A DNA stretch of 64,000 nucleotides. Origin: Cycas panzhihuaensis. Its lineage: Eukaryota > Plantae > Cycadophyta. The notes beneath the pieces were generated by a model, which worked only from the letters and a program-made list of their open reading frames with translations, was not told where the DNA came from and made no database searches. Where the stretch lies: NCBI GenBank assembly GCA_023213395.1, contig CM041465.1, forward strand, positions 228,353,741 through 228,417,740, read 5' to 3'. Of the stretch, positions 6,864 to 51,276 are shown in pieces (position 1 is the stretch's first letter; every line of letters begins with the position of its first letter). The position numbers were made by a program, and so were the translations under genes.

Positions 6864-7226
6864 ATGTATTCCACTGCTGCTATTTCGTTGGTGAACTGGT
6901 TCAGGGCGGGAAGACCATTACACGTATTACTATCTATAGAATGTATAGAATGCAGAGGAAGAAGAAGTTTAGGGTTTAGAGGAATTCAAAGCCTTTTTAC
7001 TGGTATGAACCGAGGCTGCGATGATGATGTAGAGCATCGAAATCAATGGAAAATACGGCACACAAATTTCAATGTTGCTGCTTCTTGCATTTCACCGTTG
7101 TCTGCTATTCATTTGTTAGCAATAGCGCCGATGTCTCCCAACAAGAACCAGACGAAGAAATTCTACGTGGTTCGTAAGGGTAAAATCCCGGGCATTTATG
7201 ATACCTGGGGGGAGTGCAAGCGCCAG
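6864..7226 (+). CDS. First coding exon of an RNase H1-like protein: N-terminal RNA:DNA hybrid-binding (Cauli_VI-type) domain, with alternative start at ATG 7131
   Basis: KKFYVVRKGKIPGIYDTWGECKRQ matches the HBD consensus FYxVRxGxxxGIYxxWxEC and ends at a canonical CAG|GTAAGT donor (7226/7227). Downstream exons were not identified. Confidence 0.75.
6970..6977. promoter_or_regulatory. Telo-box (TAGGGTTT) near the 5' end of the putative host gene
   Basis: Exact TAGGGTTT within TTTAGGGTTTAG, a site-II-like AGCCCA at about 6613-6618, and locally CpG-retaining sequence. Short motifs can occur by chance. Confidence 0.35.
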
Positions 7227-7565
7227 GTAAGTGCTTCTGCATCTTGGTTTATCCGTTACTTTTGGCATATGCTAAAATTTGCAGATAGGTTTAATATACA
7301 CGAAATATTTGCTGATTTGGATAAAACACTCGATGTTTCCACTCGAGCAAGAAATAGCAGGTCGTGGTTTGGCAAACCAAACTGCACTCGCCGCAATTGA
7401 TGCCCTGAAAATGTTCCTAAAACAATTCGGCCAGTCTAAAAACATGGACACATATCTATAGGGTTTGGAAATAATGATTCAATTTAACATCATGACAAAA
7501 ATTGGGCGGCCTTGAAAACCCACCACCTCCACCCCAATGCCGTGATCATAGTTTTTCTGAAAGTT

Positions 7566-12400: not shown

Positions 12401-15400
12401 TTTGTCATTGAGGTTGTTGTCAAGCGTGGCTTGAGCCTTCCCTCGTTGATTAGTATTTCCTTGAGAAGCAAACTATTATTAACTATTACGGAGGTTCCTT
12501 ATTGTTAACCGTCACTTGACCTTACTATCATTAAGTAATGCTTGGACACAATTGAGGAATGCACCTACATGCTATGTTTGCATTAAATGTTTGATTAGAT
12601 TCATGTTATCAATGGATTGTTCATATGCTACGGAATGCCATTGCTAGTGCTAACTGCAACATACAAACTGAATGCTCATGGGACAACTAACGCACAAGCC
12701 ACATCCTACCATGAAATGCTCATAAGATAACAAAATACAATCATAAACACAAAGGTAGATGAAAGACGTTTTCGTAACCCTTATGCTCTCATCAATAATA
12801 ATAACATTCTCACATTGCATTAAATCCAAATGCTCAGCTCTCACCTTGAAATGATTTTAAGAATGCCCTTTTTATCTTGCTAAAGGGTTGCCCTTATATA
12901 ACATTGCGCGACCCTTGTTTAGAATTTTATGTCCTTTTATTAGCAACTAATGACCATAGTTTGCCTTCAACACTTTCGACTGCATAATACATTGTTAGTT
13001 AATCATTTGCTTTAATTTTTAGTCATTATTTGGATTGGCATATTGAAGTATGCTCTGCTTTCATGACCGTTTTCAATCTATATGTTGAACTTGCCTTCCA
13101 TTTTTTATTACAATTAGAATGCCCTATGGAAAGCTCTTTGTGTTTGTTGCCATTCTAGACATAATACCAAAGCTTGAGCATACATCACTTGATAGGTACA
13201 AAAATGGTTGAGTGTTTTCATTCATAATTCAATAAATAATTTGAAGTTTTGATCAAATTTGATGTTACTCACTCTTCCTTCAGAACTTCACAACTTTTGT
13301 AATTGCTCTTTGAACTCTACGATCATGAGTTGCTTCTCATCATGTTTGCCATATAATTTTTTGACTTGTGGTTCCAAGGCTAAGATGTCTTCTTTGTACA
13401 GTTGCTCAACTTGTTTGAGTTCTTGATTGTAAATGGTTTTCGCAGCTAGTAACATTTGTTTTTTGCTTTTAAGATCTTTTGCCATTCTTATACTCAATTT
13501 TCTAGAGCATCCATCTCACAATGTAGGGAATGACTTTTACATGGTGATTGTCTACTTTCCTTGATCTTGTTGCCATTTATGCATTCATTTGTTAAGAAAT
13601 AATGCTTAATATATGGTCAATCCATAATGGTCATGTTATGTTGTCTAGTGGTCATATTATTGTAGTGGAGTCATTTGGAATACCCTCTCAAATTTGTAAA
13701 TATGTGAGCAACATTAACTGTCGTGCAAATGCTCACTTGATTGGTTGGTATAAAGGTTTTCACGCATGATCTAATTGGTTGATGTTTGGTGCAACATCAT
13801 TAGTTATCAATGTGATGACTATTTGTATAAAAAGGCATAGCATATTCGTGGTTAGTTATGAAGACACTTAGTGCTTTTTCAATGGAAACTAGTGTGGTCT
13901 CATCATGTGCTTCATTATATATCATTTTGTGTTAATGAGATCTCATACATTCAAAGTGGATGTTTCCTTATCTCGAGGTTTTACCACTGTAAATCTTGTG
14001 TCTCAATATTGAATGCTTGATTTATGTTTCCTTGTTCATTATGGATGACTACATCCCCAATTGACGATCATGTGATATATTAGACCTAATGATGAATACT
14101 TCCATATCAATGCGCACGTAGCTTGCGAGGTGTTTGATATTGTTGTCATGATGATATCAAACCCAAAATTTTAACATGGTATAAGATCAATTTTATTCCA
14201 TTTTCTAACATAGTTGAGTGTCATTATAGTATTTGCATTTCCATTGTTGTATTTGGACGATTTGCTTTCTAATTTTTGTGTTTGTCTAACAAATATCTTC
14301 TAGGATGGTTTATCTTTGATTTTTTCTTCATCAATTTTGTTAATTGATTCATTAATGAACTTTTGGAGCTATGTTTGCTTTTCTTTTTCCTTATCTAAAT
14401 AGTGTAGCACGTCTTGAATTACTCTCTCATATTCTTCATTTGTGGCCACTTTTTCTTACTACCTGTCAAATTCCATTTTGACATCCACTAAAAATTGTTG
14501 CACCTCATCCAATTTTTGCCTTATCATTTAGGATTCATTTATTGCTTCAGCTTCCAAAGCATTGACATTGACCACCTCAATCTCAAAGTGTCTTGTTGGA
14601 ATAGTCTTCTCTTTGTTAAGATTTTAACATGGAGCAAGATCAATAGCATCAACAGAGATTAACACAATATAATCAGAATGTATTACCATACCAAAAGCAC
14701 CAAAGACTCAATATGAGCCTTGATGATGTGATGTCTCTACATACTACCTCAACCACCTTTATATACCAAAGAGGTGGGAGACTATTCAACACAAGTAATG
14801 CATGTGGGACAAATACCTTTGTCCTGACCAATAGCATTACACCACTAACTTGACCAATAAACTTATATCCTTTTACATAGTATTATAATGACCTTTTGAC
14901 CCTAAGACTTAGGACTATCACTTATTATCCTAGGACCCACAAACATTAAACATTATTTCTATCACCTCCCCTTAATGTTTAATGTTTGAACTAAGGACAA
15001 TTTAACATACATTGACACTTGACATGAATAGACATTAAAGACTACATGACAAGACTGACATGACTCTTTAACACATGGTTGTCAACAGACTCCAATGCAC
15101 TTTGTCTTCTTTGAATCTCCACCGTCTTGATCTTGGAAAGGTCTTGAACACCATGTCTTGGGTTTGATCTTGGTCTTCAACCTTGTAGTGTCCTTTGAAC
15201 TGACGATCCTCGAACTTTGCCTCTTTCAACTTCACACATAATTGAGAATCCTTGGACATGCAAAACAAGTAGTGAAACATGGATAATTCAGAATGATCCT
15301 GCATATATTCATCATAGATATCTTCAAGGTGTCTTTCAAATATGTCTTCTATCACCTGTTTGCTTCTCCCTTCTTCAGTATGTGAGTGACCAAAGTAGAT

Positions 15401-16113
15401 GTTAGCAATATCATCATTATCCAAATGCAGCAATGAGTTACCAACTGGTAAGACATCATTATCCTCCCCTGAAGCAATGGACTTATTGAGACGAGTTCCT
15501 GCAAATTGTATGATATATCCTGTTCTCTTCGTGTAACTCAAGGAGTTCCATGAACTAAGTATAATGAGAATTTCCATGATACTCACATGCATATACTTCC
15601 TGAATATGGATATGCATACATGGAACATTATTTCAATCTGATTGACTTTCATAGTCAGGTAACCTATCCAAAAGGTAATATGAATTCGATAAGCATGATC
15701 CTGATGACATGATATCCTCCTTATGTTCCTTTGAAAACAACTTTCTAGTCTTTGCTCTAGGATATCTTTGTTATAATTTTGATCTTTTCAAAGGTGAGAA
15801 TGGAGAATGTAATCGAGTTGAGGGAGATCATGGATATTTTCCAATACATGCAAACCATCGTATGACCTGTCACCAATTGAATTCTTCCTATCAACTTGAC
15901 AACACAAACTAGGATAACATTATCCATACCTTTTGTTAGGCAACTCATGTCTCCATGAACTATTACTGGCAAAGATTGATTCCTGAAATCTTCTGGTTCC
16001 TTGATGAGACTTATGGCTTTGTTACGCTCCTTTTCCCTTTTCCTTTCCTCTTCAACTTCTTCCTCGATTTTTGCCCTTTTGATTCTCTCTTTGTTGCATT
16101 TCTTGTGTCCTTT

Positions 16114-16482
16114 TTATTCACTTACAAGATGGTTTCCAAGCATCCTCGGTGAGTCCATATTCTGTAGAACCTGGATAATAAAGTGATAGGAAGAAGGGAG
16201 GTTATCCTTATCAATGGCTGCAAGTATCACGTCAATAACAATTCTATTTTTTCTTTTGAAGATTTCCTCCCCTTCTTCGTAAGCCGTTTCAGTCCCCATG
16301 ACTGTTTTCCAAAGATTCTTCACTACAAATAGACTTTCCATCTTAATTTTCCAAAAACGAAAATTAGTTCTACTGTATTTGGGCAGAGGAAAACAATGAT
16401 CTGATAGCCAATATTCATTTCTCTCAGGCACAAAGGTGATAATGCCACTTAACTCCATGATGTATGATAAAAGAATATCCAC
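16114..16482 (-). pseudogene. Copia-type gag N-terminal remnant
   Basis: PKYSRTNFRFWKIKMESLFVVKNLWKTVMG matches the copia Gag N-terminal consensus (NY..W..KM...L....LW..V.G). Confidence 0.8.
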
Positions 16483-17518
16483 TTCAACTTGAAAATCAAA
16501 TCAACAAAAGAGGACTTAAACTGAATCTTGTTCCACTCTCCTCACAATCTATGAATGTTCGCCAAGACAACCATCATGATGGGCAGTGCTCTCCTTCCAC
16601 ATTTTGTGTATACCTGTAAGCAACCACTGACCAAAGATTGGAGTTTCCTATCAGGATAACTCTTCCAGCCGGTTTATCACATCACCGTGTTACAAGCGTA
16701 AAGAAATGACCTCCTCACCTGTGGCCGATAATGGTGTCTTCGATTGTGATTCACCTTCAACGGCAAAAGTGCGACTCTATCTTCATGAGTACCGCTTGCG
16801 GGACTATGTTCAAGATCGCCTGCCCACTTGCTAGCCTTGTTCTTATTTTAGCCACCGTCAAAGCTGGCGGGGCTGTCATGTCTTTGACCGAGATTCACAA
16901 GAACTCAACACAAGATCGACTTACGGTTTCGATCATATGATCAAATTCGTAGTGTTCACCCTCTTTCTTGACACTTCCCTTAGAAAGCGGTCATACATAT
17001 CATTACCAACTGTAGAGTCACCTTTGTGAAGCCCAAGCCTAGCTGCTACAATTGCAAATTTTCGATTACCACTGCTTCCCAAAGAACTCTTCTCGCCATT
17101 ACCCTCTCAGGGAATTATGGATCAGAAAAAGAATGTGGTATGCCAACTGAGTTCATGATTTGCTCTGCTGTAAACGAGACTACACGCTCCACTGATTGTC
17201 AAGGAACGAGCTGCTTATTGAAATCTGATTGTTGCCTTCAAGAGGACTCTACTTCAGAGACTGCAGGTTGCACTATTAGGAATTCCATATCCACGTCCAG
17301 GGATCTATTGGGAGAGAGCTTCTTAAGTGGTTCAACAAAGTCTTCACTGAAAGTTGCACGGAAGCTATGTGTCGCAGGCATTTACAAGCAAGATAAAGTG
17401 CTGCACAAGAGGGTGTCTATGGTATGGTGACCAAAGTTGCAGGTGATTCAGATTACGGCGATTGGCGTGACGTTGAAGATGAGGATGAATCAAGTTTAGA
17501 GGACCATAGACAGATGCA

Positions 17519-18146
17519 GATGGATCCTTTTTGTTTTCGCCCGCTTCCACAGCCTGCGCTCTTGCCCACACTAAATATAATAAATGCCTTCGCTATCTCA
17601 CCAATATAACGACTAAATTTAACGGAGGAGTGCCTAATGTGTATATAGACGGACCAAGTCAAGATGCAGTCAATAGACGGATCCTTTTTGTTTTCGCCTC
17701 CAACGCCTGGGAATTGCCTGTCATTTTGGCGACGAAATTGCAGAGTGTCTCCAATATGTGTGGAGGTATTGGAGCAACGTAGGCATCGGGTGGGCAAGGG
17801 AATCCCCCGTTCAAGATGTAGACGACACGGATACCGCGGATACCACGGAATCGCTTACACGGATACCACGTATCTCAGGAAGTGTTTACCCATTTTAAGA
17901 GGAAAGATGGCGAGTTCTTCTGCTTTGCCGGGCAAACAAATGAAGCCGTTACCGGCATGTATAACTTGTACAGGGCATCTCGGCTACAGTTTCCTGGCGA
18001 ATCGCTTCTTGAAGAAGCCAGGACCTTCGCTCTCAGTTTCCTTAAACAGAAGCGAGCCAATAACGAACTTGCCGATAAATGGATTATCGCTAAGGGTTTA
18101 GTTGGGGAAGTTGAATACGCTCTGAATTTTCCATGGTTCGCGAGCC
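17519..18146 (+). pseudogene. CPS: Captured, intronless, scrambled fragment of ent-copalyl diphosphate synthase / class II diterpene cyclase
   Basis: DGSFLFSPASTACALAHTKYNKCLRYL..KFNGGVPNVY (17519-17644); RLQRLGIACHFGDEIAECLQYVWRYWSNVGIGWARESPVQDVDDT (17695-17829, DxDD at 17815-17826); RLHGYHVSQEVFTHFKRKDGEFFCFAGQTNEAVTGMYNLYRAS..DKWIIAKGLVGEVEYALNFPWFAS (17852-18145). Confidence 0.93.
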
Positions 18147-18156
18147 AATCGTGTAA

Positions 18157-18423
18157 GAGGTTGATACATTCGTGGAAGAGGCGCTTGTTAAAGACACGGA
18201 CTGGCTATCAGGAATGCCCTAGACACTTACAGGGACACATGTCTTTGTATGCACGCATGGAAGTTGTAATCGAAGGTGTGGTGTTTGTGGGCCTGTGCTT
18301 GTCAGGAAATTTAAAGAGGAGATTGAAGCTCGTGGCCTTAAAGGTCATGTGTCTGTGAGCCCGTGCTCACATGTTGGAGGACACAAATATGCTGGGAATC
18401 TCATAATATATGGACCAAATGCT
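18157..18423 (+). pseudogene. Captured fragment of a sucrase/ferredoxin-like (Apd1/Aim32-type thioredoxin-like [2Fe-2S]) gene
   Basis: Frame +1 (not in the ORF track): EVDTFVEEALVKDTDWLSGMP*TLTGTHVFVCTHGSCNRRCGVCGPVLVRKFKEEIEARGLKGHVSVSPCSHVGGHKYAGNLIIYG. Contains the C-x8-C...H-x-G-G-H ligand motif and one stop at 18220-18222. Confidence 0.9.
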
Positions 18424-21400
18424 CTGTACATGCATCTCCACCTTGTGAACCAGTGCTTTAAACTTCATCCATGATGACAGAATAAAGGGAAACTTTCCAA
18501 CTGCGAATGATTCTCACAGTGGCTTGCCTTCTGCATATGGCCAGTAACGTAAATACTATAGCCTCTTGATAGCGTAGATGGCTCGCTATTAATGTGCCTT
18601 TCCTTCTATGGCCACTGGCTATCAATAGACTCCTCAACAACAAGCTTATAATCATGAATGCAAATGGTCATCTTTTGTGGCGGCTATGCAACTGAGTGAC
18701 TGAATAATCACATAAGGGCCTCCACGATAATCTTTGCTAACGCTTCCGCAGACACAGATCACACAAATGTATCACTCTCTATAAACAACAGAGACTCCTT
18801 ACGATGATGGCAATAGACTAGCATATCTTCGAATGAGGTTGTGATCGGTTATGGCTTAGCAAGAGCTCCTTTCAGCGAGGGTTATGGTATAGCAATTTTA
18901 TACAAGCTTGGCACCATCTCCAGACTTTATCAACCATATTTCAATGATTTTCACACAGGCATTTGTTTACTAGTTTTTAGTAGTAATTGTGCAGATGACA
19001 GGATCTCTTCCGCAAGAAGGGTTTATGACAGAAATAATCTCAAACAAATCCTTAATATTTCCAACAACTCTCACTTTCATAATATAAGCAGGGTTCAATG
19101 GCTAACAGATTCAGATTTCACACATAATTTCAAACTAATTTCTTTCAGAGCAGACTCAACACTCAGCCTTCTCAGCAGGGCATAGAAACAATGTTACCCG
19201 GTAAACGATGACTCCCTTAGGGTTCCACCTCTCAAAAAGTAGAGTCTCAAATCTGGAATTGTCTCTTACAAAGCTACCTCCACACACATCCACGAACTGG
19301 CGATTCTTCACAACGAAGCTTGGCAAATAACCTGCGCTGATACCATGTTAAGATTTTAACATGGAGCAAGATCAATAGCATCAACAGAGATTAACACAAT
19401 ATAATCAGAATGTATTACCATACCAAAAGCATCAAAGACTCAATATGAGCCTTGATGATGTGATGTCTCTACATATTACCTCAACCACCTTTATATACCA
19501 AAGAGGTGGGAGACTATTCAACACAAGTAATACATGTGGGACAAATACCTTTGTCCTGACCAATAGCATTACACCACTAACTTGACCAATAAACTTATAT
19601 CCTTTTACATAGTATTATAATGACCCTTTGACCCTAAGACTTAGGACTATCACTTATTATCCTAGGACCCACACACATTAAACATTATTTCTAACACTCT
19701 TTACAACCAACTTGTTTCGCATCCTAGAGGCATAGTATTAGTGGGCTAAGATACACCACTTCAATCCTCTTATCTAGCTAGTACAACTCATGTATTGAAT
19801 TTTTTTACAAGAGTTGAAATTGTAGGCATAATTCCTTTTTTTCCCCATTTTTTTAGCTTGCTTCTATTGGGAAATAATGTTGAATTTGTTGTCAATCCAT
19901 GTTTATTGTGATTATGTAATTGACTATACCTCAAATATCATGTATAATTATGTTAAAAAGAGGTGCACACATGACGATTCTTAATATGTGAACATTATTA
20001 AATTATGTGTTCGAGCCCACATCTTCATGTATTCTCATAAGCTATCTTAGTGGTCCTTCAATCTCATTAGACCTCTATGAGGTGACTTTTATCTATAAAA
20101 ATGTACCTCTTCTAATGCAATAGATGAAGATTGATCATTCTTCCAATTTCTGTTGTACTTTATATTGGTGTATATTTCATCTTTCTTTATCATGGTATCA
20201 TGGTTTCTTTGTAATACTTGTTATATGATATTAAAGCACTTATGCAATTTTCTAATAGCTTCACCTCCCATCTCTTCTTAGACCATTGTCAAATGTTTTC
20301 CAAGGCAAACTTATGCTACATATTTTGTAATGTCAAGGTGTTTTGCCGAATAACTAGGGACCACCTTCTCATGGTAAGCTCCCTATGGCCATATTAGTTG
20401 AGATGCAAGCTAGTTAGGACTAATGGGCATTACAAAACTAAAACATTCATTTAAATGGCTGTTAACTATTGATTGATGTTGGTCATAACAAATTTTGCTC
20501 TACTATATCCCTACTAGACTCATGTTAGTAATCCCTACAAAGTGATAATACTACTTTTACATATCGATTATTCCTATTTACTCTCTCCACTCAATTTACA
20601 CATTCATATCAGTCAATGAAAAATCAATATGCGATCAAAAGCTTTTCATTAATTCAAGCCCTGTCAGAAGCTTAATTAATGACAAAAGATACACAATTGT
20701 TCTCACTTGAATTAATAATTTAACTCGCCCTAAAACTAGGTTTGTATACTAATTTTCCCATTGATTCCCAAGAGGTAGGAATGAAATTGTTGTAATGCAT
20801 TTTTTCATATGAAGTTAACAAGTCATTAACCATTTGGTGTGGTGAGCCTACACCACATGTTAGAGAGGGCTATGACCCTCCATCATATGAGGATTAATAG
20901 GATTGGTTGATATAAAGGTAGGAATATAATAATATGGGGGTGAGTGTTATATATACTCCACTCTATTGTAAAGAGGAGAATATGATACAATGATGTTGGA
21001 GTGTAATGTCATCACTCCACTCCCTCTTACCTACCAGGCTTGTGCACTTCAATTTAGACATGTGATGCTCAACATGTCAAGGTAAGTTAAGGTAAGTAAT
21101 GAAGGAATATAAACTAGCAGGAGAACAGGTCAGAACATATATCAAATAACCATAAACCAGTATTGCATTAATACATCAATGTGTCACAATCACAATAGCA
21201 TAAAGAATATGAAAGCCTTGTTGTTCAATCCATTGTAGCAATAATGAGCATTACAAATCTCCTCAAAGGTAGGCGGTGTCTAAAGACACGGGGTTGTACA
21301 CCCTTAACATTTATAGTTTGGGGGAGGAAACTCCTCAACCCCTGAATTCAAATTAATAATAAAATAATGCAACTTAACTCAAATGAAACTAACTCAACTT

Positions 21401-21966
21401 ACCTTAACTTACCTTGACATGTTGAGCATCACATGTCTAAATTGAGGTGCACAATCTTGGTAGGTAAGAGGGAGTTGAGTGATGACATTACACTCCAACA
21501 TTCTCCCCCTTAATGTCAGCACGAACACTTGTATCTTTTCCTTGAACTTGTGGAATTGGTACTTGAAAAGAACTTTGAAATTCTGATCTTGATCTTTATC
21601 AACTCTTCTCACCCTTATAGTCACATATATCTCTTTATCATAGAATGATGTAGGAAGACTATAAGTAGATGAAACTTGATGCATATGTAGATGAATAGCT
21701 GTAATTTGGACTTTGTTAACTAGAACATTAGGAAGGCTTTGAGCTTGAACTTTTGTAATCTTTATACTTTGAACAACTGTCATATCATCAGGTTCATTCC
21801 TTGTCATATCATCAGATTCAACTATTATATCATCATGTTCGTTCTTCGTTATGTCATAAGATTCATTTTCATTCTCCCCCTCAAATAGAGGATCAAATCC
21901 TTGTGCAACAAGGTGGTCCTGCATTTGATCTGAATCCTCATGGTTGTTGTCGTCATGATCTATACA

Positions 21967-22278
21967 TTACATTACATGTCTCACATGCTCATCAAAAGTT
22001 TCATCAAATACATTGGGGGTATCTCCCCCATAAATGGAAATCAATAAATCCCAAACAGACTTAGAAGTTGTTAATTCAGAAACTAGTGAAAAAACATCAT
22101 CAGTCATAGTGCAAAATAATAAACCTAAAACTTCATTATCTTTTCTAAAATTTTCTTTGATGCTAAGGTCACATTCATGTTGTAAATACTTCAAAAGATC
22201 ATGTTCAATAAAGTAAGTTTGCATGGTGTCATACCATAGTGAAAAGTTATGGCCATTAAAAATGGGGAATTGTGCCAT
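21967..22278 (-). CDS. Copia Gag N-terminal mini-ORF (B')
   Basis: MAQFPIFNGHNFSLWYDTMQTYFIEHDLLKYL...TTSKSVWDLLISIYGG; near-identical partner at 26941-27264. Confidence 0.75.
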   Translation of the reverse strand: MAQFPIFNGHNFSLWYDTMQTYFIEHDLLKYLQHECDLSIKENFRKDNEVLGLLFCTMTDDVFSLVSELTTSKSVWDLLISIYGGDTPNVFDETFDEHVRHVM

Positions 22279-23733
22279 TTTGAAAGCAATGTAATCAATA
22301 AGAAAATAATGATGTGTTTGAAAGCAAACTTAAAAAATCTTTTTCACTTATGCAAAACTGAAATAAACTCTTGAGAATGAAATATAAAGAGTTTCCAAAA
22401 ATACCAATTTCTCAAATGAGTAAATGTAAATTTTCAATGTAAAAAAATTTTCCCTTTTTGTATAAAAATAACTTTTCTTTGAGAAAAATATATATTGCCT
22501 TATGAACAATTTCTGGTTCAAAACAACTTAAAATGCTTGTAGAAAGATCAAGTAGAAACCTTGAGTTAAACAATGAGATATAAACTAGAATTTTCTTAAA
22601 AATTTTGAAAAAAGACAAGCTTATTAGGATGTACTTGTATGCTCAACTTTAACAGCTTGAAAACTATACTGAATAATGTCAGAATAACTTAAAATTCTAC
22701 CAATATGTAGATTAATAAGGTGTGAATCCAATGAAACAAATGGTTTTGAAAACGGGTACCAATAAATCACGATTTGAATGAGACAAAGGTATGGACCTCC
22801 TTACGGAGCCTAACAGGAACAAGGTAGTCAAAATTTGCATAAAATTACTAATTAACCTTTAGAAAAAGTTGAACAAATGATCAAATATTGTTTATGAAGT
22901 AATCAATGTTCTTTCAATTGAAAATTTTTTGAAAAATATATTAAAAATGTGTAAAAAACAGTAGATTTAGGGCAATGAGATACCTCGACTTTGACTGATT
23001 TGAAATTTAGGAAGATAATATCAAAATATATAAAAAAATATGTCAAAATGAGGAGAAATGAGTCGAACATGAAGTTGTGGAATTGAAATCTGATAAAAAA
23101 TGAGAACGTTATAGTGAAAAAGGTAACATGTGTCTTTATGGAGAATGTTAAAAAACAGGCAAAAAACAACTAAATTCCTTATTTCAGCGATTAAAATACT
23201 AATGAAGATAAATTCAAAAAATTGAAATAAGAAATGGGTATTGAAGTCTATACAACGTAGATCGCTATAGAGGAAATTTGGGCAAAAACCAGTTTACCAG
23301 TAATAAATGACAGTCAGTTTTAAAAACGATTTTGTTAAAAATATGAAAAATGCTAAAATTTTGAAAGTCTAATGTTAAAATGGTCGAAACAGGGTCAAAT
23401 TGGCACCAAATTGGTCATATGACCAGTCGAAATTGGTGTCTGAAAAATTTCGATCTATTAGAGGCGGTTTCGTTTGAAACCGATGCTCCAGTGAAAAGTT
23501 ATGGCCACAAAAGCGCCAATAACTCTATGAAAAATAAAGTTTTGAAAAAATAAAGCTTAAAATTAAAAAAAACTTCTTAAAAATGGGCCTGAAGATGGAC
23601 TGAGTCAGGATTGAACCCAAGATCAGTCAAAGAGTAAAGACCTCCGATGTCAGGAGGGTGAACTCGCTCGTCGAGTTTTAAAACAAAAGATTATTAAAAA
23701 CCCTTAAAACTGGATTTTAAAAGAACATATAAT

Positions 23734-23856
23734 AAATGATGGAATAATAATAGCAGGACTATGCTCTGATACCAAATGATGGAAAAAATATGGAGCCAAA
23801 GTGCTCTGATACCAAATGATGGAATAAGAATAGCAGGACTATGCTCTGATACCAAA
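23734..23856 (-). repeat. Tandem array of tRNA-iMet PBS + U5-end units, 40-bp period
   Basis: GCTCTGATACCA at 23763-23774, 23803-23814 and 23843-23854, each followed by AATGA(T/A)GGAA. A fourth end-like motif without a PBS lies at 23734-23742. Confidence 0.95.
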
Positions 23857-26800
23857 TGAAGGAATATAAACTAGCAGGAGAACAGATCAGAACATATATC
23901 AAATAACCATAAACCAGTATTGCATTAATACATCAATGTGTCACAATCACAATAGCATAAAGAACATGAAAGCCTTGTTGTTTAATCCATTGTAGCAATA
24001 ATGAGTATTACAAATCTCCTCAAAGGTAGGCGGTGTCTAAAGACACCAGGGTTGTACACCCCTTAACATTTATAGTTTGGGGGAGGAGGGAAACTCCTCA
24101 ACCCCTGAATTCAAATTAATAATAAAATAATGCAACTTAACTCAAATGAAACTAACTCAACTTACCTTAACTTACCTTGACATGTTGAGCATCACATGTC
24201 TAAATTGAGGTGCATAATCCTGGTAGGTAAGAGGGAGTTGAGTGATGACATTACACTCCTGTGTGATCCTCTGTACTGGATTATTAGCTGTCCTCAGATC
24301 CATTGTCTGATTTTCATATATTAGCTCTACCATTATATTATTCATTATTTACATTTGTCATTATATATTGTCTGTGCGTTTGTCATTTGTACGCCGTCTC
24401 TGCTCCGTCATTCTCACGCCTCGAGGTTCACTGCGTCACGTCTCTCATTGTGTTGTTATTGCGTTGTTATTGACCCATACTTCATTGATACCTGCTCCGT
24501 TGGCCCGTGCTTTATACCTGCTCTGTTGCATATTGCTATTTCCGTCTAGTCGTCCTCTGTGTCACCGTTCCGGCCTGTGTGCCGTGATTTCCTATTCCGG
24601 CCTGTGTGCCGTGATTTCCTATTCCGGCCTGCGTTTCGTCACGTTCTCTCCGTCTGCTCGCAGTTCTTGTTCTTCATGACCTTACGTGCTGTGATTTCCG
24701 TTCCGACTGCGTTAGTCCGTTCTCTGCTCGCTCTTTGCGTCTGCGTCCCAATCTGCTTGCATGCGTCCCAATCGACTAAGCGCCCCGTCCTTTTTGCCCG
24801 CTTTACAGTCTTTGCGCGTTACAGTCTTTGCACGTTTATTGTATCATTGCTCCGTCTTTGCGCGTTTATTGATTCGTTTGTATCATTGCTCCATCTTTGC
24901 GTCTACAGTCTTTGCGCGTTTTGCTGTACAGTATTCGTTTGTGTGATCATTACGGGACTTCTTTGCTGTCTTTGTGTCTCGGCGCCTTTGCGTTTCATTA
25001 ATCGCCCGTTTGCGTTTCATTAATAATCGTTTGGCATTTCCGTAACCTGCATTTGATCATTATTATGTGATCTGCATGCCCGAACTGCCCTTTCGTTCTG
25101 CCATTTGACTGCATGATCTGTTCATTGCTGCGATCTGCATTTGATCGTTGCGTTTAGCCGTTTGACTGCGTGTACAGTCGTTGCTAAGTCCGATCTCTGT
25201 TTAGCCCGTTTATCGGTTTGGTAATCCGATCGGCGCGTTGCTAACGCATTGATTATACGTTTCATTGTACTGGGCTTCAATCCCGTTTATTGAGTCATTA
25301 TTGCTATCCGTTCAGCTATTTTATTATTATTCCTCGATTATATTTCATTCGGCCTACGTCTCATTATTGCATATTGTGTTTTTGCGTTTTATTTGTATTG
25401 GCCTCTACGCCTTGCGCTTGATTTTCTATTACGGTTTAATATATTCATTTATTTTATAAGATTTAAAAATTAAAATTAATTAAATAATCTTTTGAGATCC
25501 GAGTTTGAATCTTTTAAAGTTTTTTTGCGTTTTTTAACTTGACGAGTGAGTTCACCCTCCTGGCATCGGAGGTCTTTAGTCTCTGACTGATCTTGGGTTC
25601 AATCCCAACTCAGTCCATCTTCAGGCCCGTTTTTAAGAAGTTTTTTTTTAATTTTAACCTTTATTTTTTCCAAAATTTTATTTTTCATAGAGTTATTGGC
25701 GCTTTTGTGGCCATAACTTCTCACTGGCTTATCGGTTTCAGACGAAACCACCTCCAATAGATCAGAAATTTTCTGTACACCATTTTCGACTGGTCATATG
25801 ACCAATTTGGTGCCAATTTGACCCTGTTTCGACCATTTTAACATTAGACTTCCAAAATTTCAGTTTTTTTCGCATTTTTAACAAAATCGTTTTTAGAACT
25901 GGCTGTCATTTATTTCTAGTAAACTGGTTTTTACCCAAATTTCCTCTATAGCGATTTACGTTGTATAGACTTTAATACCCATTTTTTCCTTCAATTTTTT
26001 GAGTTCACCTTCATTAATATTTTAATCGCTGAAATAAGGAATTTAGTTGTTTTTGCCTGTTTCCTAATATTCTACATAAAAATACTTGTTACATTTTTTA
26101 CTATAACGTTCTTATTTTTTATCAGATTTCAATTCCGTCAGCTTTGTTGGGAAGCTGACTCATTTCTCTTCATTTTGACATATTTTTTATATATTTTGAC
26201 ATTATCTTCCTGAATTTCAAATCAGTCAAAGTTGAGGTATCTCATTGCCCTAAATCTACTGTTTTTTACACCTTTTTAATATATTTTTCAAAAATTTTCA
26301 ATTGAAAGAACATTGATTACTTCATAAATAATATTTGATCATTTGTTCAACTTTTTCTAAAAGATAATTAGTAATTTTATACAATTTTGACTACCTTGCT
26401 CCTGTTAGACTCCATAAGGAGGTCCATACCTTTACATCATTCAAAACGTGATTTATTGGTACCTGTTTTCAAAACCGTTTGTTTCATTGGATTCACACCT
26501 TATTAATCTACATATTGGTAGAATCTTAAGTTATTCTGACATTATTCAGTATAGTTTTCAAGCTATTAAAATTGAGCATACAAGTACATCCTAATAAGCT
26601 TGTTTTTTTTTAAATTTTTTAAAGAAAATTCTAGTTATATCCCATTGTTTACTCAAGGCTTCTACTTGATATTTCTACAAGCATTTTAAGTTGTTTCAAA
26701 CTAGCATTTGTTCATAAGGCAATATATATTTTTCTCAAAGAAAAGTTATTTTTATACAAAAAGGGAAAGTTTTTCTTATATTAAAGATTTACATTTACTC

Positions 26801-26940
26801 ATTTGAGAAATTGGTATTTTTTGAAAACTCTTTATATTTCATTCTCAAAAGTTTATCTCAGTTTTGCATAAGTGAAAAAGATTTTTTAAGTTTGCTTTCA
26901 AACGCATCATTATTTTCTTATTGATTACATTGCTTTCAAA

Positions 26941-27264
26941 ATGGCACAATTCCCCATTTTTGATGGCCACAACTTTTCACTATGGTATGACACCATGCAA
27001 ACTTACTTTATTGAACATGATCTTTTAAAGTATTTACAACATGAATGTGACCTTAGCATTAAAGAAAATTTTAGAAAAGATAATGAAGCTTTAGGTTTAT
27101 TATTTTGCACTATGACTGATGATGTTTTTTCACTGGTTTCTGAATTAACAACATCTAAGTCTGTTTGGGATTTATTGATTTCCATTTATGGGGGAGATAC
27201 CCCCAGTGTATTTGATGAAATTTTTGATGAGCATGTGAGACAGTGTGAGCAGGATAGATCATGA
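26941..27264 (+). CDS. Copia Gag N-terminal mini-ORF (B)
   Basis: MAQFPIFDGHNFSLWYDTMQTYFIEHDLLKYL...; copia Gag N-terminal consensus. Confidence 0.75.
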   Translation: MAQFPIFDGHNFSLWYDTMQTYFIEHDLLKYLQHECDLSIKENFRKDNEALGLLFCTMTDDVFSLVSELTTSKSVWDLLISIYGGDTPSVFDEIFDEHVRQCEQDRS

Positions 27265-28163
27265 CGACAACAACCATGAGGATTCAGATCAAATGCAGGA
27301 CCACCTTGTTGCACAAGGATTTGATCCTCCATTTGAGGGGGAGAATGAAGATGAATCTGATGATATAACAAAGAATGAACTTGATGATATGACTTGAATC
27401 GATGATATGACAAAGAATGAACGATGATATGACAGCTTGAATCAAGATATGACAAAGAATGAACACGATGATATGATGCTTATTCAAAGCATAAAGATTA
27501 CAAAAGTTCAAGTTCAAAGCCTTCTTAATGTTCCAGTTAACAAAGTCCAAATTACAGCTATTCATCTACATTTGCATAAAGTTTCATCTACTTATAGTTT
27601 TCTTACATCATTATATGATAAAGAGACATATGTGGCTATAAGGGTGAGAAGAGTTGATAAAGATCAAGATCAGAATTTCAAAGTTTTTTTCAAGTACTAG
27701 TTCCATAAGTTCAAGAAAAAGATACAAGTGTTTGTGCTGACATTAAGGGGGAGAATGTTGGAGTGTAATGTCATCACTCCACTCCCTCTTACCTACCAGG
27801 CTTGTGCACCTCAATTTAGACATGTGATACTCAACATGTCAAGGTAAGTTAAGGTAAGTTGAGTTAGTTTCATTTGAGTTAAGTTGTATTATTTTATTAT
27901 TAATTTGAATTCAGGGGTTGAGGAGTTTCCCTCCTCCCCCAAACTATAAATGTTAAGGGGTGTACAACCCTGGTGTCTTTAGACACCGCCTACCTTTGAG
28001 GAGATTTGTAATGCTCATTATTGCTACAATGGATTGAACAACAAGGCTTTCATGTTCTTTATGCTATTGTGATTGTGACACATTGATGTATTGATGCAAT
28101 ACTGGTTTATGGTTATTTGATATATGTTTTGACCTGTTCTCCTTGCTAGTTTATATTCCTTCA

Positions 28164-35805: not shown

Positions 35806-38800
35806 TTATCAACAACCCCATTTCCTTCTCTATAGGTATGACACACTTGGAAGTTCTCTCTGCCCTTTATGATCTCTTGAATGCCTCTGATCATTGTGGC
35901 AACTTTCCAGTTCGGATCCGATTCTCCTCTGACCATCTTTGTCACATTTAGCAAATCTCTCTCGAGGATCACTCTTTGACAATCTTTCTTAGAGACAATT
36001 TCCATCGCCCTCTGCATAGCTGCCAGCTCTGCTTTGTGATTTTTCTGGCAGCAGTAGTATTCAACGAAGGCCCACTCAATTTTGCCTTTTGCAAATGCAC
36101 CCCCCCCGGCCCCCCTTGCTTCTCCTGGGTTGCCTTTAGTTGCCCCATCAAAATTCACTTTAACCCAATTCTCATGAGGGGGAGCCTATTTGCAATTCCT
36201 CTTCTGCCCCAAGCATAGGTTGGGTCTTCTAATTCCCCATCTTTTTAAGATGATCTCCTCTGAGTCCGGGATGAGCTTCTCATCTTGAATGCCAACTGCT
36301 TCTTCGAGCGCAACATGGGTTATACTGAAGTGTTTTCTCACATCCATATGTTTATCTTCAAAGATCCTTCTGTTTCTTTCCTTCTGCAGATTCCACATCA
36401 TCATGGGTAAAGATATTTGCCACAAATGCCTCAAAGTCCTCCATTTGAAAGGACTTTTCCATACAAGGACTTGCTCCTTAATAGTTCCAGAAATCACCCA
36501 CTCAATCCCAAAATGGGCCTAAATGAGATTCCAGACATTTCTGGAATAATCACAGTGCAGTAGGATGTGGTCCATAGACTCCTCTGCTTCTCGACATAAA
36601 ACACATCTGTTAGCCATCACGAAACCCCTCTATCTTAGATTATCCATAGTAAGAATTTTATTTCTGAGGCATAGCCACCAAAACATCGCGACTTTGGGAA
36701 TCAGGCCCAGTCTCCACACCCTCTCCAACATTGAATTTTTTTGGCCCCCCTTGTCTAAACATAAAAGCAAGTGCCTGTGCTTCATCGAGTACTCACTCGA
36801 GGGGGATAATAGCCAGACAAGAGAATTTGCCTCTGGCCTTTTAGGGATGTAACAATCTGCTAACTCTTTCCTCAGGGCTTCAATTTGATCGCTCAAGCCT
36901 TGGTCTTTACCCACCTCTTGAAATGTTCTCCAACTTCTATTCCGATCTTGGATCTCCTAGTAATCTTTTACCTTAACACCATAGGTTCTTTCGCAAATAT
37001 CTTGGATAGGGCTTATCTTCGGTCTTCTATTCAGCTGCATGTGACTGCACCATATATCTTCCTAGAATTTTATGGACGCTTCGTCTCCCAACTTCCATTG
37101 AACTCCTGAGGTAAGCATCTTTCTTGCGTAGAGAATGCTTCTCTAGATAGTAGATCCCAAAGATATAATGATGTCATCCTTTAAAAATTTCTTCCCTTGG
37201 AGATATTTCTAAGCAATGATTCTAACCCACAGGCCATCTTCATTCTTTGTCAATCTCTAGCCAACTTTTGCTATCAAAGCCTTATTGAGAAGTGTCATGC
37301 TTCGAATATTCAGACCTCCGGCCCATTTAGGGAGACAAACCTTGTCCCAAGCCACCAAGTGGGTTCTATCCCTCTCCTTCGCACCTGACCATAAGAATCT
37401 CTTTTGGATTGCTTCCAGAGTAGAGATAATCCTTGTTGGCATCTTGAAATAGACACCATGTATACCAGAATGCTCTGAAGGGATGCAGACAACAGTTGGA
37501 TCTTTCCCGCCTGGCTTAATAGAGATCTCTTCCACCCAACAAGCTTTCTCAGCACCCGCTTAATGATGGGATTCCATAGTTCTTTCTCCACCTTACCCAC
37601 AAATAGGGGCATGCCAAGATAGATAGTAGGAAAATTTCGGACTGACATTTCCAAAATTATCCTGATCCTCCTCTTGGTGATCTCTTTTGTATTCACAAAG
37701 AAGACAATGCTCTTGTTTGGGTTTATTTTATGGTTTGTAGCTCTCTCAAACCTCACGAGTTCCTCTTTAAGAGTGTGAGCTCCACTTGGGGCCAATTTTC
37801 CTAATAGAATGTTGTTATCCACAAATTGATGATGCACAATATCGTCAATGTTAGAAGTAGGCTTTGTTCCTTGGATCTTGCCTCTTCTCCTCGCCTCCTC
37901 CATCGCCCTTCCCAACAGTTCCGCCCGAATTATGAATAGGCAAGGAGATAAAGGATCCCCTTGGTGCAATCCTCTGTATCTAGAGAAGAAGGTAGTCAAA
38001 GTACCATTGATTATAATCGAGTATTTAGGCTTTGATATGCAGCATTCCGCCCATTCCTTCCGCTTGTCCCCAAAATTGAATCTTTGGATGTAATCCAAGA
38101 GGCAATTCCTGTTAGAATGTAATGTGTTATCTCTAGGATATTAAAGGGGTAATGTGCACACACTTGTATAGTAACCGACATCACAAAATATGACACTTGT
38201 CATCTCCAGGACTGTCAGTTACTTTTCTCTCTTTGTAACAGTCTTAGAACCAATTTGTATTTATAGAGACATAGTCTCCACATGAATATCAAGCAAAGCA
38301 TTCTGAATATAACTGAGTTACTCTTGTTTTAACATGGTATCAAAGCAGGTCTGCCTGGATACTTGTTTAACACTTTGAGAGCTGTGATTAAGTCTGAGAG
38401 CAAACTAAAGCAGAATATTAAAGACTTAAAGGTCAAGTAATGTCTTAAAGCTGAAGAAGGCAATCTGTTTGCGAAAATCTTTCTGTACGAAGTCAATTTT
38501 TCAAGGTACTCAGAATGAGTTGAAATTTCACTAGTTGGTGCGTCTCTGCATGAAGAAGATTTCTCTTAACTAAGTCAAAGTCATTGGGAGTCGTTTTGAC
38601 CCTGTTTTAGCTAGTAGAATAGCCACGCGGGATTGGGAGCTCGAACTCACGTTTTCTCTTCGATTCGCTTCAAAACCTGGCGAGGATTGCTGAATCTTTT
38701 GAGTAGATTAGACTCAAATCTTTTGTCCCTTGTAAGTATTATAATATTCTTCGAGCTGCTTTCCAGTGTCTTATTTTAGGTTCCTGCATGTATCTAGATA

Positions 38801-50100: not shown

Positions 50101-51276
50101 TATTTTTGAACTGCCTGATTACTATCTTTTCGTCGACGGGGCGGTGACGACGACTGTGACTCCTTCTCCATAATGGTGGCGTTTGACGGCTATGGTAGAT
50201 GGCGGCTCCGTTTCTGGCTCCCGTCCGGTAGGTGACAACTACAACGTCGGCTCCTTCTGAACAACGACGGCTCCTTCCAAATAGCGACGACTCCTTCTGA
50301 ATAGTGGCAACTCCTATACCGAGTGGCGGCGGCTCCTTTCATCAGCAGCGACTGCTTCATGTGACAGGCACAGGAACGACATCTAAGAGCAGGGTGTTGC
50401 CACGATGGCTACAACAAGTGACTGGGCTTCGACGAGATCTCCATAGTGGCGGCAGTCCGGAGACTAGTGATTGGCAGGTTTCTTCTAACTAGCTATGGCA
50501 GCTCAGGAGCAATGGTGGCTGCGCGATGGGAGAGGCTCCACAAAGGGCGCTAGAAGGAGGGCAGTTCTGGTTTATCTCCCTGAGTAATGATAGCTGACAA
50601 CTGTGCCTCTTAACATAAGCGTCTTCATTTAGTTGTGCTCCTTCACAGTCACTAATTTCAGAGGAGGGAAGACTTAGATCATGCGACCATCAGGCAGCAA
50701 CTCAAACGTCCTCATGCAGACTAGCAACATCAATTGAAGGACAATTGACCCTCTCTGAATCTCAATTAGCATATACTTTGTGTTTGGTAGACAAGAAGAG
50801 GAGGGCATACTCTTCTTAAGACAGAACCTAACACACACTTGGACAGAATCTCACAAACATAGGGTATTATCTAAGTGTCAAGAACCTAAGCTCTGATACC
50901 ATGTAGGAATGAGTGGATAGGAGGAGGAGACATGTCATAAAGCACATGTGAAAAAACCACAAGAGATGACAATGCGACAAATGACTCACAACTCTCGAAA
51001 TGTCATTAAGAAAATATGAATGATATAAGTACATATTTATAACTTTACACTAAGTCTAAACATAGGAGGTGGTTCAACAACTCCAACGCTCCCATGAATT
51101 TTGGTGTGCTCAAACTACCTCATTAATAGTTTGAGCATCTTTGAGTTCTAGAACATTGACTAAGAATCTTCTCTCACTAGAATATTCTCATCAAGAATAT
51201 TCTATGTGAGCAATTATTCTAATGAAATGAAATGAACTTAAATGAACATGTAATGGGAATGTACATTATTCCAACA
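47200..51276 (-). mobile_element. Element E: non-autonomous LTR element with gag remnant and internal tandem repeats
   Basis: 375-bp LTRs at 47200-47574 and 50902-51276; PBS at 50890-50901; PPT from 47575; (A)AGAT duplicated at both flanks; gag-like YENLWELL..LAFINLLVVDE at about 48600-48810. Confidence 0.92.
47910..48150. repeat. Roughly 40-bp minisatellite inside element E
   Basis: About five GATCAACTAGAA(C/T)TAAGTG..CACATCCTGT(T/C)GTTG-like units. Confidence 0.75.

What the first reader, a model, noticed from the sequence alone, without database searches (positions are those of the whole stretch)
14614..19696. 'Pack'-type LTR retroelement carrying a mosaic of host mRNA fragments antisense to its own transcript
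Seen: a complete, TSD-flanked, pol-less LTR element on the - strand. Between its PBS and gag remnant it holds at least two unrelated host-gene pieces on the + strand: a class II diterpene cyclase (17519-18146) and, 10 bp later, an Apd1/Aim32-type ferredoxin (18157-18423). Known: gene capture is typical of Pack-MULEs and Helitrons and occurs in some LTR elements (e.g. maize Bs1). Inference: the cargo travelled with the element, and LTR-driven RNA would be antisense to the parent genes. That could make it a mobile trans-acting siRNA source against gibberellin/diterpenoid biosynthesis and Fe-S genes.
Basis: partly seen in the sequence, partly recalled or inferred. Interest (0 to 1): 0.9.

Follow-up and report, generated by a model that had tools for sequence, protein, structure and literature searches.

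The report
Small LTR retroelement carrying antisense gene fragments
This is a real, fairly young, non-autonomous Copia-like retrotransposon whose leader holds decayed, backwards-facing pieces of two plant genes (a gibberellin-pathway cyclase and an iron-sulfur protein): a known kind of accident of reverse transcription, unusual only in the pieces' orientation, with no evidence so far that it regulates anything.

Summary
At 14614-19696 there is a complete 5,083-bp LTR element on the minus strand. Its 351-bp LTRs are 98.3% identical and end in TG..CA. It has a 5-bp target duplication (CTCTT), a tRNA-iMet-type PBS, a PPT and a weak gag N-terminal remnant, but no pol. Two unrelated host fragments lie in its leader on the opposite strand. 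One is a class II diterpene cyclase (ent-CPS-like, with the DxDD motif) at 17516-18148; the other is a Suc_Fer-like (Apd1/Aim32-type) piece at 18160-18423. The CPS piece is colinear with about 204 codons without introns. It is broken by two small templated duplications; the Suc_Fer-like piece has an in-frame stop. Contigs of four public runs show that the LTRs and the 3' internal part are very high copy, the two leader parts are moderately repeated, and the CPS core is at about single-copy depth. One contig in another sample bridges the ferredoxin/leader junction. The best reading is LTR-mediated retroposition (Bs1-like template-switch capture), giving a low-copy dead passenger. Antisense orientation is atypical for this kind. 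"Cargo travelled with the element" is not shown, and the siRNA role is untested and already a published idea. Unchecked scan notes report similar antisense cargo elsewhere in this genome, on other DNA. Verdict: a new member of a known kind.

The parts
14609..14613 (.). Target-site duplication, left copy (CTCTT)
   Evidence: identical to 19697-19701.
14614..14964 (-). 3' LTR in element sense (351 bp, TG..CA)
   Evidence: 6 mismatches to the other LTR. Word depth in other samples is up to about 1e5.
14965..14975 (-). Polypurine tract (minus strand TTAAGGGGAGG) abutting the 3' LTR
   Evidence: read directly from the sequence.
14976..16113 (-). Family-specific 3' internal region. It is high copy in other samples. 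It holds a 194/239-aa ORF with no family match and no pol.
16114..16500 (-). gag N-terminal remnant (DUF4219-like, motif NFRFWKIKMESL..LWKTV)
   Evidence: E 0.0027, below Pfam's cut-off, so weak. High copy.
16501..17454 (.). Leader part L2, with no recognisable coding content. Depth falls from thousands (16500-16782) to hundreds (16783-17355) to tens. Contigs from other samples stop matching exactly at 17454.
   Evidence: (tables 2, 5, 8).
17455..17515 (.). 61-nt spacer of unknown origin between L2 and the CPS piece
   Evidence: no match found.
17516..18148 (+). ent-CPS-like class II diterpene cyclase fragment, intronless, antisense to the element. It has three in-frame blocks: 17516-17647, 17698-17829 (holding QDVDDT, the DxDD motif) and 17852-18148. 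They are colinear with residues 269-472 of Ginkgo CPS. Two frameshifting templated insertions break it.
17675..17698 (+). 24-nt templated duplicate of 17518-17541, inserted inside the CPS reading frame
   Evidence: (D2).
17825..17873 (+). Three copies of ACACGGATACC(G/A)CG. Twenty-two nt replace the expected seven codons after DxDD and were copied from the HGYH codons just downstream.
   Evidence: (D1).
18149..18159 (.). 11-nt filler between the two host pieces
18160..18423 (+). Suc_Fer-like (Apd1/Aim32-type thioredoxin-like ferredoxin) fragment, in one frame with an in-frame TAG at 18220, antisense to the element
   Evidence: E 2.6e-21; parent-type contigs X6 rec29 and X16 rec14 match exactly this stretch with 7 mismatches in 264.
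18424..19333 (-). Leader part L1, a moderately repeated family leader that runs up to the PBS in contigs from other samples
   Evidence: records 6, 7, 15, 23, 24, 30, 31; depth 60-700.
19334..19345 (-). Primer-binding site, minus strand TGGTATCAGCGC (tRNA-iMet type)
   Evidence: Another element in this window has the similar PBS TGGTATCAAAGC at 38335.
19346..19696 (-). 5' LTR in element sense
19697..19701 (.). Target-site duplication, right copy (CTCTT)

Best explanation
This is a non-autonomous, gag-remnant-only Copia-type LTR retroelement that inserted roughly 0.7-1.2 million years ago at usual plant rates. It belongs to a very abundant family. Its leader, between the PBS and gag, carries a chimeric partial retrocopy: about 630 nt of spliced ent-CPS-like mRNA joined through 11 nt of filler to 264 nt of a Suc_Fer-like gene, both antisense to the element. 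The most likely origin is LTR-mediated retroposition. In this process reverse transcriptase inside a virus-like particle switches template several times between element nucleic acid and co-packaged host RNAs, and also slips locally, which would explain the two templated micro-duplications. Copying an mRNA during minus-strand synthesis would give sense cargo. The antisense orientation therefore points to switching during plus-strand DNA synthesis just after the second strand transfer, or to a later internal inversion. The cargo is now a decayed passenger with frameshifts and a stop codon, present in one or very few copies. Any small RNAs it yields would be the ordinary by-product of TE silencing. 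Shown: the anatomy, the identity of the cargo, its orientation, its decay and its low copy number. Inferred: the mRNA origin, the template-switch mechanism and the stage at which it happened.
For: The element is complete and has a matching TSD, so it inserted as one unit. Cargo identity rests. The CPS piece is colinear with 204 codons with no insert longer than 50 nt, whereas CPS (TPS-c) genes have 12-14 introns and BrCPS1 has 15 exons (PMC6239295, PMC9315314). Both pieces are internal CDS fragments with no poly(A), no TIRs and no second TSD around them. The 11-nt filler and the templated duplications of 24 nt and about 22 nt are typical of low-processivity template switching. Tan et al. 2016 (PMC5131818) describe the same anatomy: partial mRNAs, sometimes from two or more genes, inside discontinuous LTR elements, with 2-26 nt of de novo sequence at some junctions. 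The leader parts on both sides of the cargo occur in other samples next to the PBS/LTR or as repeats. The cargo junction is not an assembly artefact, because X2 record 22 bridges 18321-18454 with 2 mismatches.
Against: [quoted passage not shown] Microsimilarity at the switch points could not be checked because no parent sequence could be retrieved. The parent CPS locus of this species was not seen, so 'intronless' rests on the conserved structure of the gene family. The 264-nt ferredoxin piece could be a single exon and so does not discriminate RNA from DNA origin. Templated micro-insertions are also a hallmark of polymerase-theta end joining.
Confidence: 0.6

Rival explanations
1. Post-integration acquisition. 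A double-strand break inside the already inserted element was repaired by microhomology-mediated (polymerase-theta-type) end joining. The repair stitched in filler copied from cDNA or RNA of CPS and Suc_Fer-like transcripts and from nearby sequence. On this reading the cargo never moved with the element.
For: The cargo is a patchwork of short pieces with an 11-nt filler and locally templated duplications, which are classic filler-DNA signatures. Orientation would be random, so antisense needs no special explanation. The CPS core is at single-copy depth in other samples.
Against: Intronless CPS sequence needs an RNA or cDNA template, and reverse transcriptase inside particles is the most direct source of one. 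The leader parts on either side (L1, L2) do not appear contiguous with each other in contigs from other samples. That fits a recombinant cDNA better than a simple insertion into an intact leader. X2 holds the ferredoxin/leader junction at depth about 17, against about 5 for single-copy contigs.
Confidence: 0.2
2. Sense capture followed by inversion. The fragments were captured in the usual sense orientation by minus-strand template switching, and an internal segment was later flipped.
For: Another TSD-flanked Copia element in this window (38110-41805) has its PBS and PPT on the + strand but its RVT_2 and gag_pre-integrase ORFs on the minus strand. Internal flipping therefore does occur in this genome. 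One contig (X16 record 13) joins 17128-17454 to 16499 on opposite strands (table 5).
Against: The depth gradient (16500-16782 as abundant as gag, falling further into the leader) suggests that the present orientation of 16500-17454 is the common one. No inverted repeats lie at the putative breakpoints. The single opposite-strand joint may be a graph artefact or a different rearranged copy.
Confidence: 0.15
3. The element is a mobile source of antisense RNA or siRNA that silences gibberellin/diterpenoid (CPS) and Fe-S (Suc_Fer-like) genes in trans.
For: LTR-driven transcripts would carry about 0.9 kb antisense to both parents. Identity to parent-type contigs is 96.4% (7 mismatches in 192, CPS) and 97.3% (7 in 264, ferredoxin), which leaves perfect runs of 21-24 nt. 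Cross-talk siRNAs between captured fragments and donor genes are documented in maize, including for Copia Sireviruses (bioRxiv 10.1101/777037).
Against: No run on record as RNA holds the stretch. In the one possible RNA run laid (X16), family parts are covered but the CPS core has zero depth. There is one copy or very few, no hairpin or inverted duplicate of the cargo, and the cargo is decaying neutrally. In maize the cross-talk affects CHH methylation with little effect on the expression of conserved donors.
Confidence: 0.06
4. The cargo sits in a nested DNA transposon (Pack-MULE, CACTA or Helitron) that inserted into the LTR element.
For: These are the commonest gene-fragment carriers in plants (PMC2774510, PMC2773423).
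Against: There are no terminal inverted repeats, no extra TSD and no Helitron-like ends around 16500-18480. DNA transposons carry introns along with exons (PMC4717578), and the CPS piece has none.
Confidence: 0.03

Closest known systems
Maize Bs1 and LTR-mediated retroposition in general (Jin & Bennetzen 1994; Elrouby & Bureau 2001, 2010; Tan et al. 2016, PMC5131818)
   Same: A low-copy, pol-less LTR element holds partial, exon-only fragments of more than one host gene, joined to each other and to element sequence with short filler. It is flanked by both LTRs and a 5-bp TSD.
   Different: Here both fragments are antisense to the element, lie in the leader upstream of the gag remnant, and do not form an open hybrid reading frame. 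Secondary copies sharing the switch points, known for Bs1, are not demonstrated.
Soybean TRIMs such as GmaRetroS15 that carry exon-only pieces of up to three genes (Gao et al. 2016, PMC4717578)
   Same: A small non-autonomous LTR element with TSD carries multi-gene, intronless cargo.
   Different: Those TRIMs are 1.2-1.4 kb and mostly have two or more copies. This element is 5.1 kb, keeps a gag remnant and appears to be single or few-copy for its cargo.
Captured gene fragments in maize Sireviruses, Helitrons and Pack-MULEs, with siRNA cross-talk to the donor genes (Muyle et al., bioRxiv 10.1101/777037)
   Same: A captured exon fragment sits in a silenced TE with high identity to its donor, so cross-talk is possible in principle.
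   Different: No small-RNA, methylation or expression data are available here. Pack-MULEs and Helitrons capture at the DNA level, introns included.
Conserved antisense additional ORFs of plant LTR retrotransposons such as Grande gene23, RIRE2 and Retand (Vicient & Casacuberta 2020, PMC7264820)
   Same: There is antisense-oriented content inside an LTR element.
   Different: Those ORFs lie between pol and the 3' LTR, are conserved across family copies and have no host homolog. Here the content is clearly host-derived, degenerate, in the leader, and not shared by the family.

Membership tests
LTR retrotransposon (structural definition) | Two direct LTRs ending TG..CA | tested here: met
   The LTRs are 351 bp and 98.3% identical.
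LTR retrotransposon (structural definition) | 4-6-bp target-site duplication | tested here: met
   CTCTT on both sides.
LTR retrotransposon (structural definition) | PBS next to the 5' LTR and PPT next to the 3' LTR, on the same strand | tested here: met
   Minus strand TGGTATCAGCGC at 19345-19334 and AAGGGGAGG at 14973-14965. That the PBS matches tRNA-iMet comes from my knowledge of the canonical Copia PBS, not from a tRNA sequence fetched here.
Ty1/Copia superfamily | Copia-type gag and pol (order PR-INT-RT-RH; RVT_2) | tested here: not met
   No pol domain was found in any tested frame. There is only a weak DUF4219 gag N-terminus (E 0.0027). Superfamily assignment is therefore provisional, resting on the PBS type and the gag motif. 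The element is non-autonomous.
LTR-mediated retroposition / transduction chimera (Bs1 type) | Partial host-gene sequence replacing or added to internal element sequence, between both LTRs | tested here: met
LTR-mediated retroposition / transduction chimera (Bs1 type) | Exons only (spliced mRNA template) | tested here: inconclusive
   The CPS piece is colinear with 204 codons with no intron-sized insert. The ferredoxin piece may be a single exon.
LTR-mediated retroposition / transduction chimera (Bs1 type) | Microsimilarity between partners at switch points | not testable with these tools
   The parent sequences were only seen as coordinates of contigs, not as letters.
LTR-mediated retroposition / transduction chimera (Bs1 type) | [quoted passage not shown] | tested here: not met
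   Both pieces read on the + strand, while the PBS, PPT and gag are on the minus strand.
LTR-mediated retroposition / transduction chimera (Bs1 type) | Secondary copies sharing the same switch points | tested here: inconclusive
   There is no second copy in the window. The CPS core is at about single-copy depth in four samples. One contig bridges 18423/18424 in X2 at depth 17. Two metagenome scans found nothing.
Pack-type DNA transposon (Pack-MULE/CACTA) or Helitron | TIRs with own TSD, or Helitron termini; cargo with introns | tested here: not met
   No inverted repeats of 14 nt or more flank the cargo, and the CPS piece is intronless.
Trans-acting antisense/siRNA locus | Transcription through the cargo and cargo-derived small RNAs that match the parents | not testable with these tools
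   No run on record as RNA held the stretch. X16 (RNA only by guess) has zero depth over 17547-18119.

The most novel reading that the evidence does not exclude
This genome may harbour a lineage of non-autonomous Copia-type elements that repeatedly take up intronless host-gene snippets in antisense orientation into a 'slot' between the PBS and gag. That would imply a specific step, for example plus-strand template switching right after the second strand transfer, or copying of RDR-made antisense strands of spliced mRNAs. Transcribed elements could then give the host, or the element, a pool of antisense RNAs against many genes. This element would be one instance. The lead comes from unchecked first-stage notes on other windows of the same genome and from a second element with flipped content in this window.
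Probability: 0.15. Interest if true: 0.7.

Novelty: new member of a known kind. Interest (0 to 1): 0.35.

Why it matters
As a single locus it is one more example of gene-fragment capture by an LTR retroelement, and a reminder that such chimeras inflate gene annotations. Two features go beyond the routine. First, it carries two genes, which was not seen among 425 cargo-bearing maize LTR elements (PMC2774510), though it is known from Bs1 and soybean TRIMs. Second, both pieces are antisense, which the standard minus-strand template-switch model does not predict. If a genome-wide survey confirmed a significant antisense bias of leader cargo in this genome, it would point to a distinct capture step in reverse transcription. 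It would also make TE-borne antisense regulation testable. As things stand, no function is indicated.

Tried and rejected
- **Sibling copies in the window:** blastn of the whole element against the 64-kb window gave only self hits.
- **Sibling copies in public collections:** two exact-pattern scans of metagenome contigs, one with the PBS/LTR junction and one with the LTR core, found nothing.
- **Fetching parent and sibling loci:** I could therefore fetch neither a CPS gene with its introns nor Logan contigs of siblings.
- **Annotated chimeric ORFs:** The search for homologous proteins with the 178-aa CPS/ferredoxin stretch gave two unrelated 65%-identical short CPS fragments and no sibling.
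- **A protein in leader part L2:** the 148-aa + strand stretch has no conserved homolog. The minus-strand pieces and the 239-aa family ORF gave nothing in Pfam or PDB.
- **RNA families:** Rfam found none in 14000-20000.
- **Source species:** the closest CPS in the searches is Ginkgo at 72%, with Taxus and Cryptomeria at about 69% and angiosperms at about 68%. The RT atlas search gave only 'Streptophyta'. The species stays unknown and the true parent protein was not in the results.
- **The ferredoxin piece as a genomic exon with intron flanks:** I considered this because of the AG before 18160 and the GT at 18426. I dropped it as undecidable. The sequence from 18424 on is covered by moderately repeated leader contigs (depth 351 in X1, 72 in X6 at 18424).
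- **Scan findings by sequence:** searching them with the cargo sequence gave a blank.

Full report

Yes. A 351-bp direct repeat lies at 14614-14964 and 19346-19696. The two copies differ at 6 positions (98.3% identity), begin with TG and end with CA. The five bases CTCTT flank the pair on both sides, at 14609-14613 and 19697-19701. The whole 5,083-bp unit therefore entered this site in a single integration.

On the minus strand the LTR at 19346-19696 is followed directly by TGGTATCAGCGC. That is one mismatch from the canonical plant Copia tRNA-iMet primer-binding site, which I know from the literature; another element in this window has TGGTATCAAAGC in the same position. On the minus strand the other LTR is preceded by AAGGGGAGG, a polypurine tract. 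The element is therefore on the minus strand.

The K2P distance between the LTRs is 0.0173. That gives about 0.67 My at 1.3e-8 substitutions per site per year, or about 1.2 My at 7e-9. The appropriate rate for this organism is unknown.

**2. What is inside?**

I translated all six frames of the internal 4.38 kb and scanned the 20 longest stop-free stretches against Pfam. The hits were:
- Terpene_synth N-terminal domain on the + strand (17677-17895, E 1.1e-6; 17822-18146, E 4.4e-21).
- Suc_Fer-like on the + strand (18223-18471, E 2.6e-21).
- A weak DUF4219 gag N-terminus on the minus strand (16117-16500, E 0.0027, below the curated cut-off, but with the typical ..W...M...L....LW..V motif).

There is no protease, integrase, RT or RNase H. 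Only about 1.15 kb lies between the gag remnant and the PPT, so the element cannot encode pol.

**3. The CPS piece**

phmmer of 17822-18146 against 1.84 billion cluster representatives gave 306 hits. The best (E 1e-37) is annotated ent-copalyl diphosphate synthase 1 of Cryptomeria japonica.

Three in-frame blocks (17516-17647, 17698-17829, 17852-18148) align colinearly with residues 269-310, 324-367 and 375-472 of the Ginkgo protein P0164. Identity over the three is 72%. It is about 69% for Taxus and Cryptomeria and about 68% for many angiosperms.

No insert longer than 50 nt interrupts these 204 codons. CPS (TPS-c) genes have 12-14 introns (PMC6239295, citing Trapp & Croteau 2001), and Brassica CPS1 has 15 exons (PMC9315314). 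The piece therefore most likely derives from spliced mRNA.

Two lesions break the frame:
- A 24-nt copy of 17518-17541 is inserted at 17675-17698, inside the codons for VDR|LQRLGI.
- The seven codons expected after DxDD are replaced by 22 nt built from repeats of ACGGATACC, copied from the HGYH codons about 25 nt downstream.

Both are locally templated slips.

**4. The ferredoxin-like piece**

In one frame, 18160-18423 reads VDTFVEEALVKDTDWLSGMP*TLTGTHVFVCTHGS..RCGVCGP...CSHVGGHKYAGN. This is the Cys/His-rich core of the sucrase/ferredoxin-like (yeast Apd1/Aim32-type) family, with an in-frame TAG at 18220.

Two long contigs from other samples match exactly 18160-18423 with 7 mismatches and no gaps, and continue differently on both sides. 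They are X6 record 29 (1,176 nt) and X16 record 14 (1,232 nt; that run is RNA only by guess). They look like the parent transcript or gene and fix the boundaries of the captured piece.

Eleven nucleotides (18149-18159) of no recognisable origin separate the two host pieces. Neither piece has a poly(A) tail. No inverted repeats of 14 nt or more and no extra duplication flank the cargo. This argues against a nested Pack-MULE, CACTA, Helitron or LINE-type retrocopy.

**5. How common is each part elsewhere?**

No public run held more than 26% of the sampled words of 16500-19345. I laid contigs of four runs on 14300-20000 at 80% or more identity.

| Region | Summed word depth | Reading |
|---|---|---|
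| LTRs and 14965-16782 | 10^3-10^5 | very abundant family |
| 16783-17355 and 18311-19265 | tens to hundreds | moderately repeated |
| CPS core, 17547-18119 | 0-12 | same range as single contigs (about 4-7) |

- The contigs that lie on the CPS core are 4-15% diverged. For example, X1 record 4 covers 17917-18108 with 7 mismatches in 192. They look like the parent gene and paralogs rather than sibling cargo.
- Contigs from other samples run from the leader into the PBS/LTR (records 24 and 31). This shows that 18424-19345 is genuine element leader.
- Contigs matching 17128-17454 or 17250-17454 stop matching exactly at 17454, which marks a real junction there.
- One 134-nt contig in X2 (record 22, depth 17) bridges the ferredoxin/leader junction (18321-18454, 2 mismatches). 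That junction therefore exists in at least one independent data set and is not an assembly artefact. I cannot tell whether it is the same locus or a sibling.
- X1 record 8 (19677-20000) contains the last 20 nt of the LTR plus the flank. This hints that the site is also occupied in that sample.

No second copy of the family is present in the window. Two metagenome scans found nothing.

**6. Mechanism**

The anatomy matches LTR-mediated retroposition as described in yeast, animals and plants (Tan et al. 2016, PMC5131818; Bs1; soybean TRIMs, PMC4717578). The shared features are partial internal CDS fragments of two genes, joined with a short filler, inside a discontinuous LTR element that keeps both LTRs, PBS, PPT and a TSD. 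The model is that reverse transcriptase switches by microsimilarity between element RNA and co-packaged host mRNAs.

The atypical feature is orientation. [quoted passage not shown] Here both pieces are antisense. I see three ways to get that, all of them inference:
- (a) Switching of the growing plus strand onto an mRNA shortly after the second strand transfer. This would also explain why the cargo sits in the leader next to the PBS.
- (b) Sense capture followed by inversion of an internal block.
- (c) Post-integration break repair with RNA- or cDNA-templated filler, where orientation is random.

Option (b) gains some plausibility from a second element in this window, 38110-41805. It has an ATTCC TSD and a + strand PBS and PPT, yet its RVT_2 and gag_pre-integrase ORFs are on the minus strand. 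One contig also joins 17454 to 16499 on opposite strands. However, the depth gradient suggests that the present orientation of 16500-17454 is the common one, and no inverted repeats mark breakpoints. Option (c) fits the templated micro-insertions. It fits less well with the observation that L1 and L2 do not appear contiguous in other samples.

I put about 0.6 on capture during reverse transcription, 0.2 on post-integration repair and 0.15 on sense capture plus inversion.

**7. The functional claim**

An LTR-driven transcript would indeed carry about 0.9 kb antisense to both parents. Identity of 96-97% leaves perfect runs of 21-24 nt. But no run on record as RNA held the stretch, and the one possible RNA run has zero depth over the CPS core. 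The cargo is single or few-copy, has no hairpin partner and is decaying.

The idea that captured fragments feed siRNAs back onto donor genes is already published and tested genome-wide in maize. There it mainly correlates with CHH methylation of the captured exon region (bioRxiv 10.1101/777037; also raised in PMC2773423 and PMC3726574). It also does not depend on antisense orientation. I give a real regulatory role about 0.06.

**8. Comparison with what is known, and novelty**

Gene-fragment capture by LTR elements is common. Reported counts are 425 elements in maize B73, hundreds to more than a thousand captured genes in rice (counts differ between papers) and 1,343 in sorghum (PMC2774510, PMC7264820, PMC13317346). 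Cargo from two genes is rarer: none was found in the maize survey, but it is known from Bs1, from soybean TRIMs and from Drosophila chimeras. This element is a new member of that kind with an unusual orientation.

First-stage notes on other windows of the same genome describe several gag-only or Copia elements with antisense host snippets in the leader. They are unchecked and I could not read those windows. I use them only as a lead for the 'novel case': a lineage or mechanism that systematically places antisense host snippets between the PBS and gag.

**9. Limits**

The source species and the parent loci are unknown, because the closest CPS in the searches is only about 72% identical. 

Noticed in passing
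window 38110-41805: This is a TSD-flanked (ATTCC) Copia element with 225-bp LTRs. Its PBS (TGGTATCAAAGCAGG at 38335) and PPT (AAGAGAGGG before 41581) are on the + strand, but its RVT_2 and Pol_BBD/gag_pre-integrase ORFs read on the minus strand. The coding interior is therefore flipped relative to the cis signals. The integrase core also seems to be missing.
   Followed up: partly
window 21098-28163: Two small gag-only LTR elements of one family lie head to head, forming a set of long inverted repeats (arms 91-98% complementary).
   Followed up: no
window 47200-51500: Another small LTR element, with LTRs about 3.7 kb apart. It is on the minus strand, with the canonical PBS TGGTATCAGAGC next to 50902. 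Stop-free stretches of 70 aa or more were listed by eye but were not scanned against Pfam.
   Followed up: partly
window 19329-19696 (contigs of X2 and X16): Contigs join the LTR end (19696) through 2 extra letters back to 19329, the PBS followed by an LTR start. Some family copies in other samples are therefore arranged LTR-PBS-LTR in tandem (tables 5 and 5c).
   Followed up: no
window 16499 / 17454: One 1,396-nt contig (X16 record 13) joins 17128-17454 directly to 16499 on the opposite strand. The 17128-17454 module therefore occurs next to the gag start in the other orientation elsewhere. This is unexplained; it may be a rearranged sibling or a graph artefact.
   Followed up: partly
window 17917: Three CPS-like contigs from two samples, at 96%, 85% and 86% identity, all end exactly at 17917. 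This could mark an exon boundary of the parent genes or a branch point between the parent and an intronless copy (records 4, 5, 21).
   Followed up: no
window 6864-7397: A 178-aa ORF with a Ribonuclease H1 N-terminal (Cauli_VI) domain, E 6e-10.
   Followed up: no
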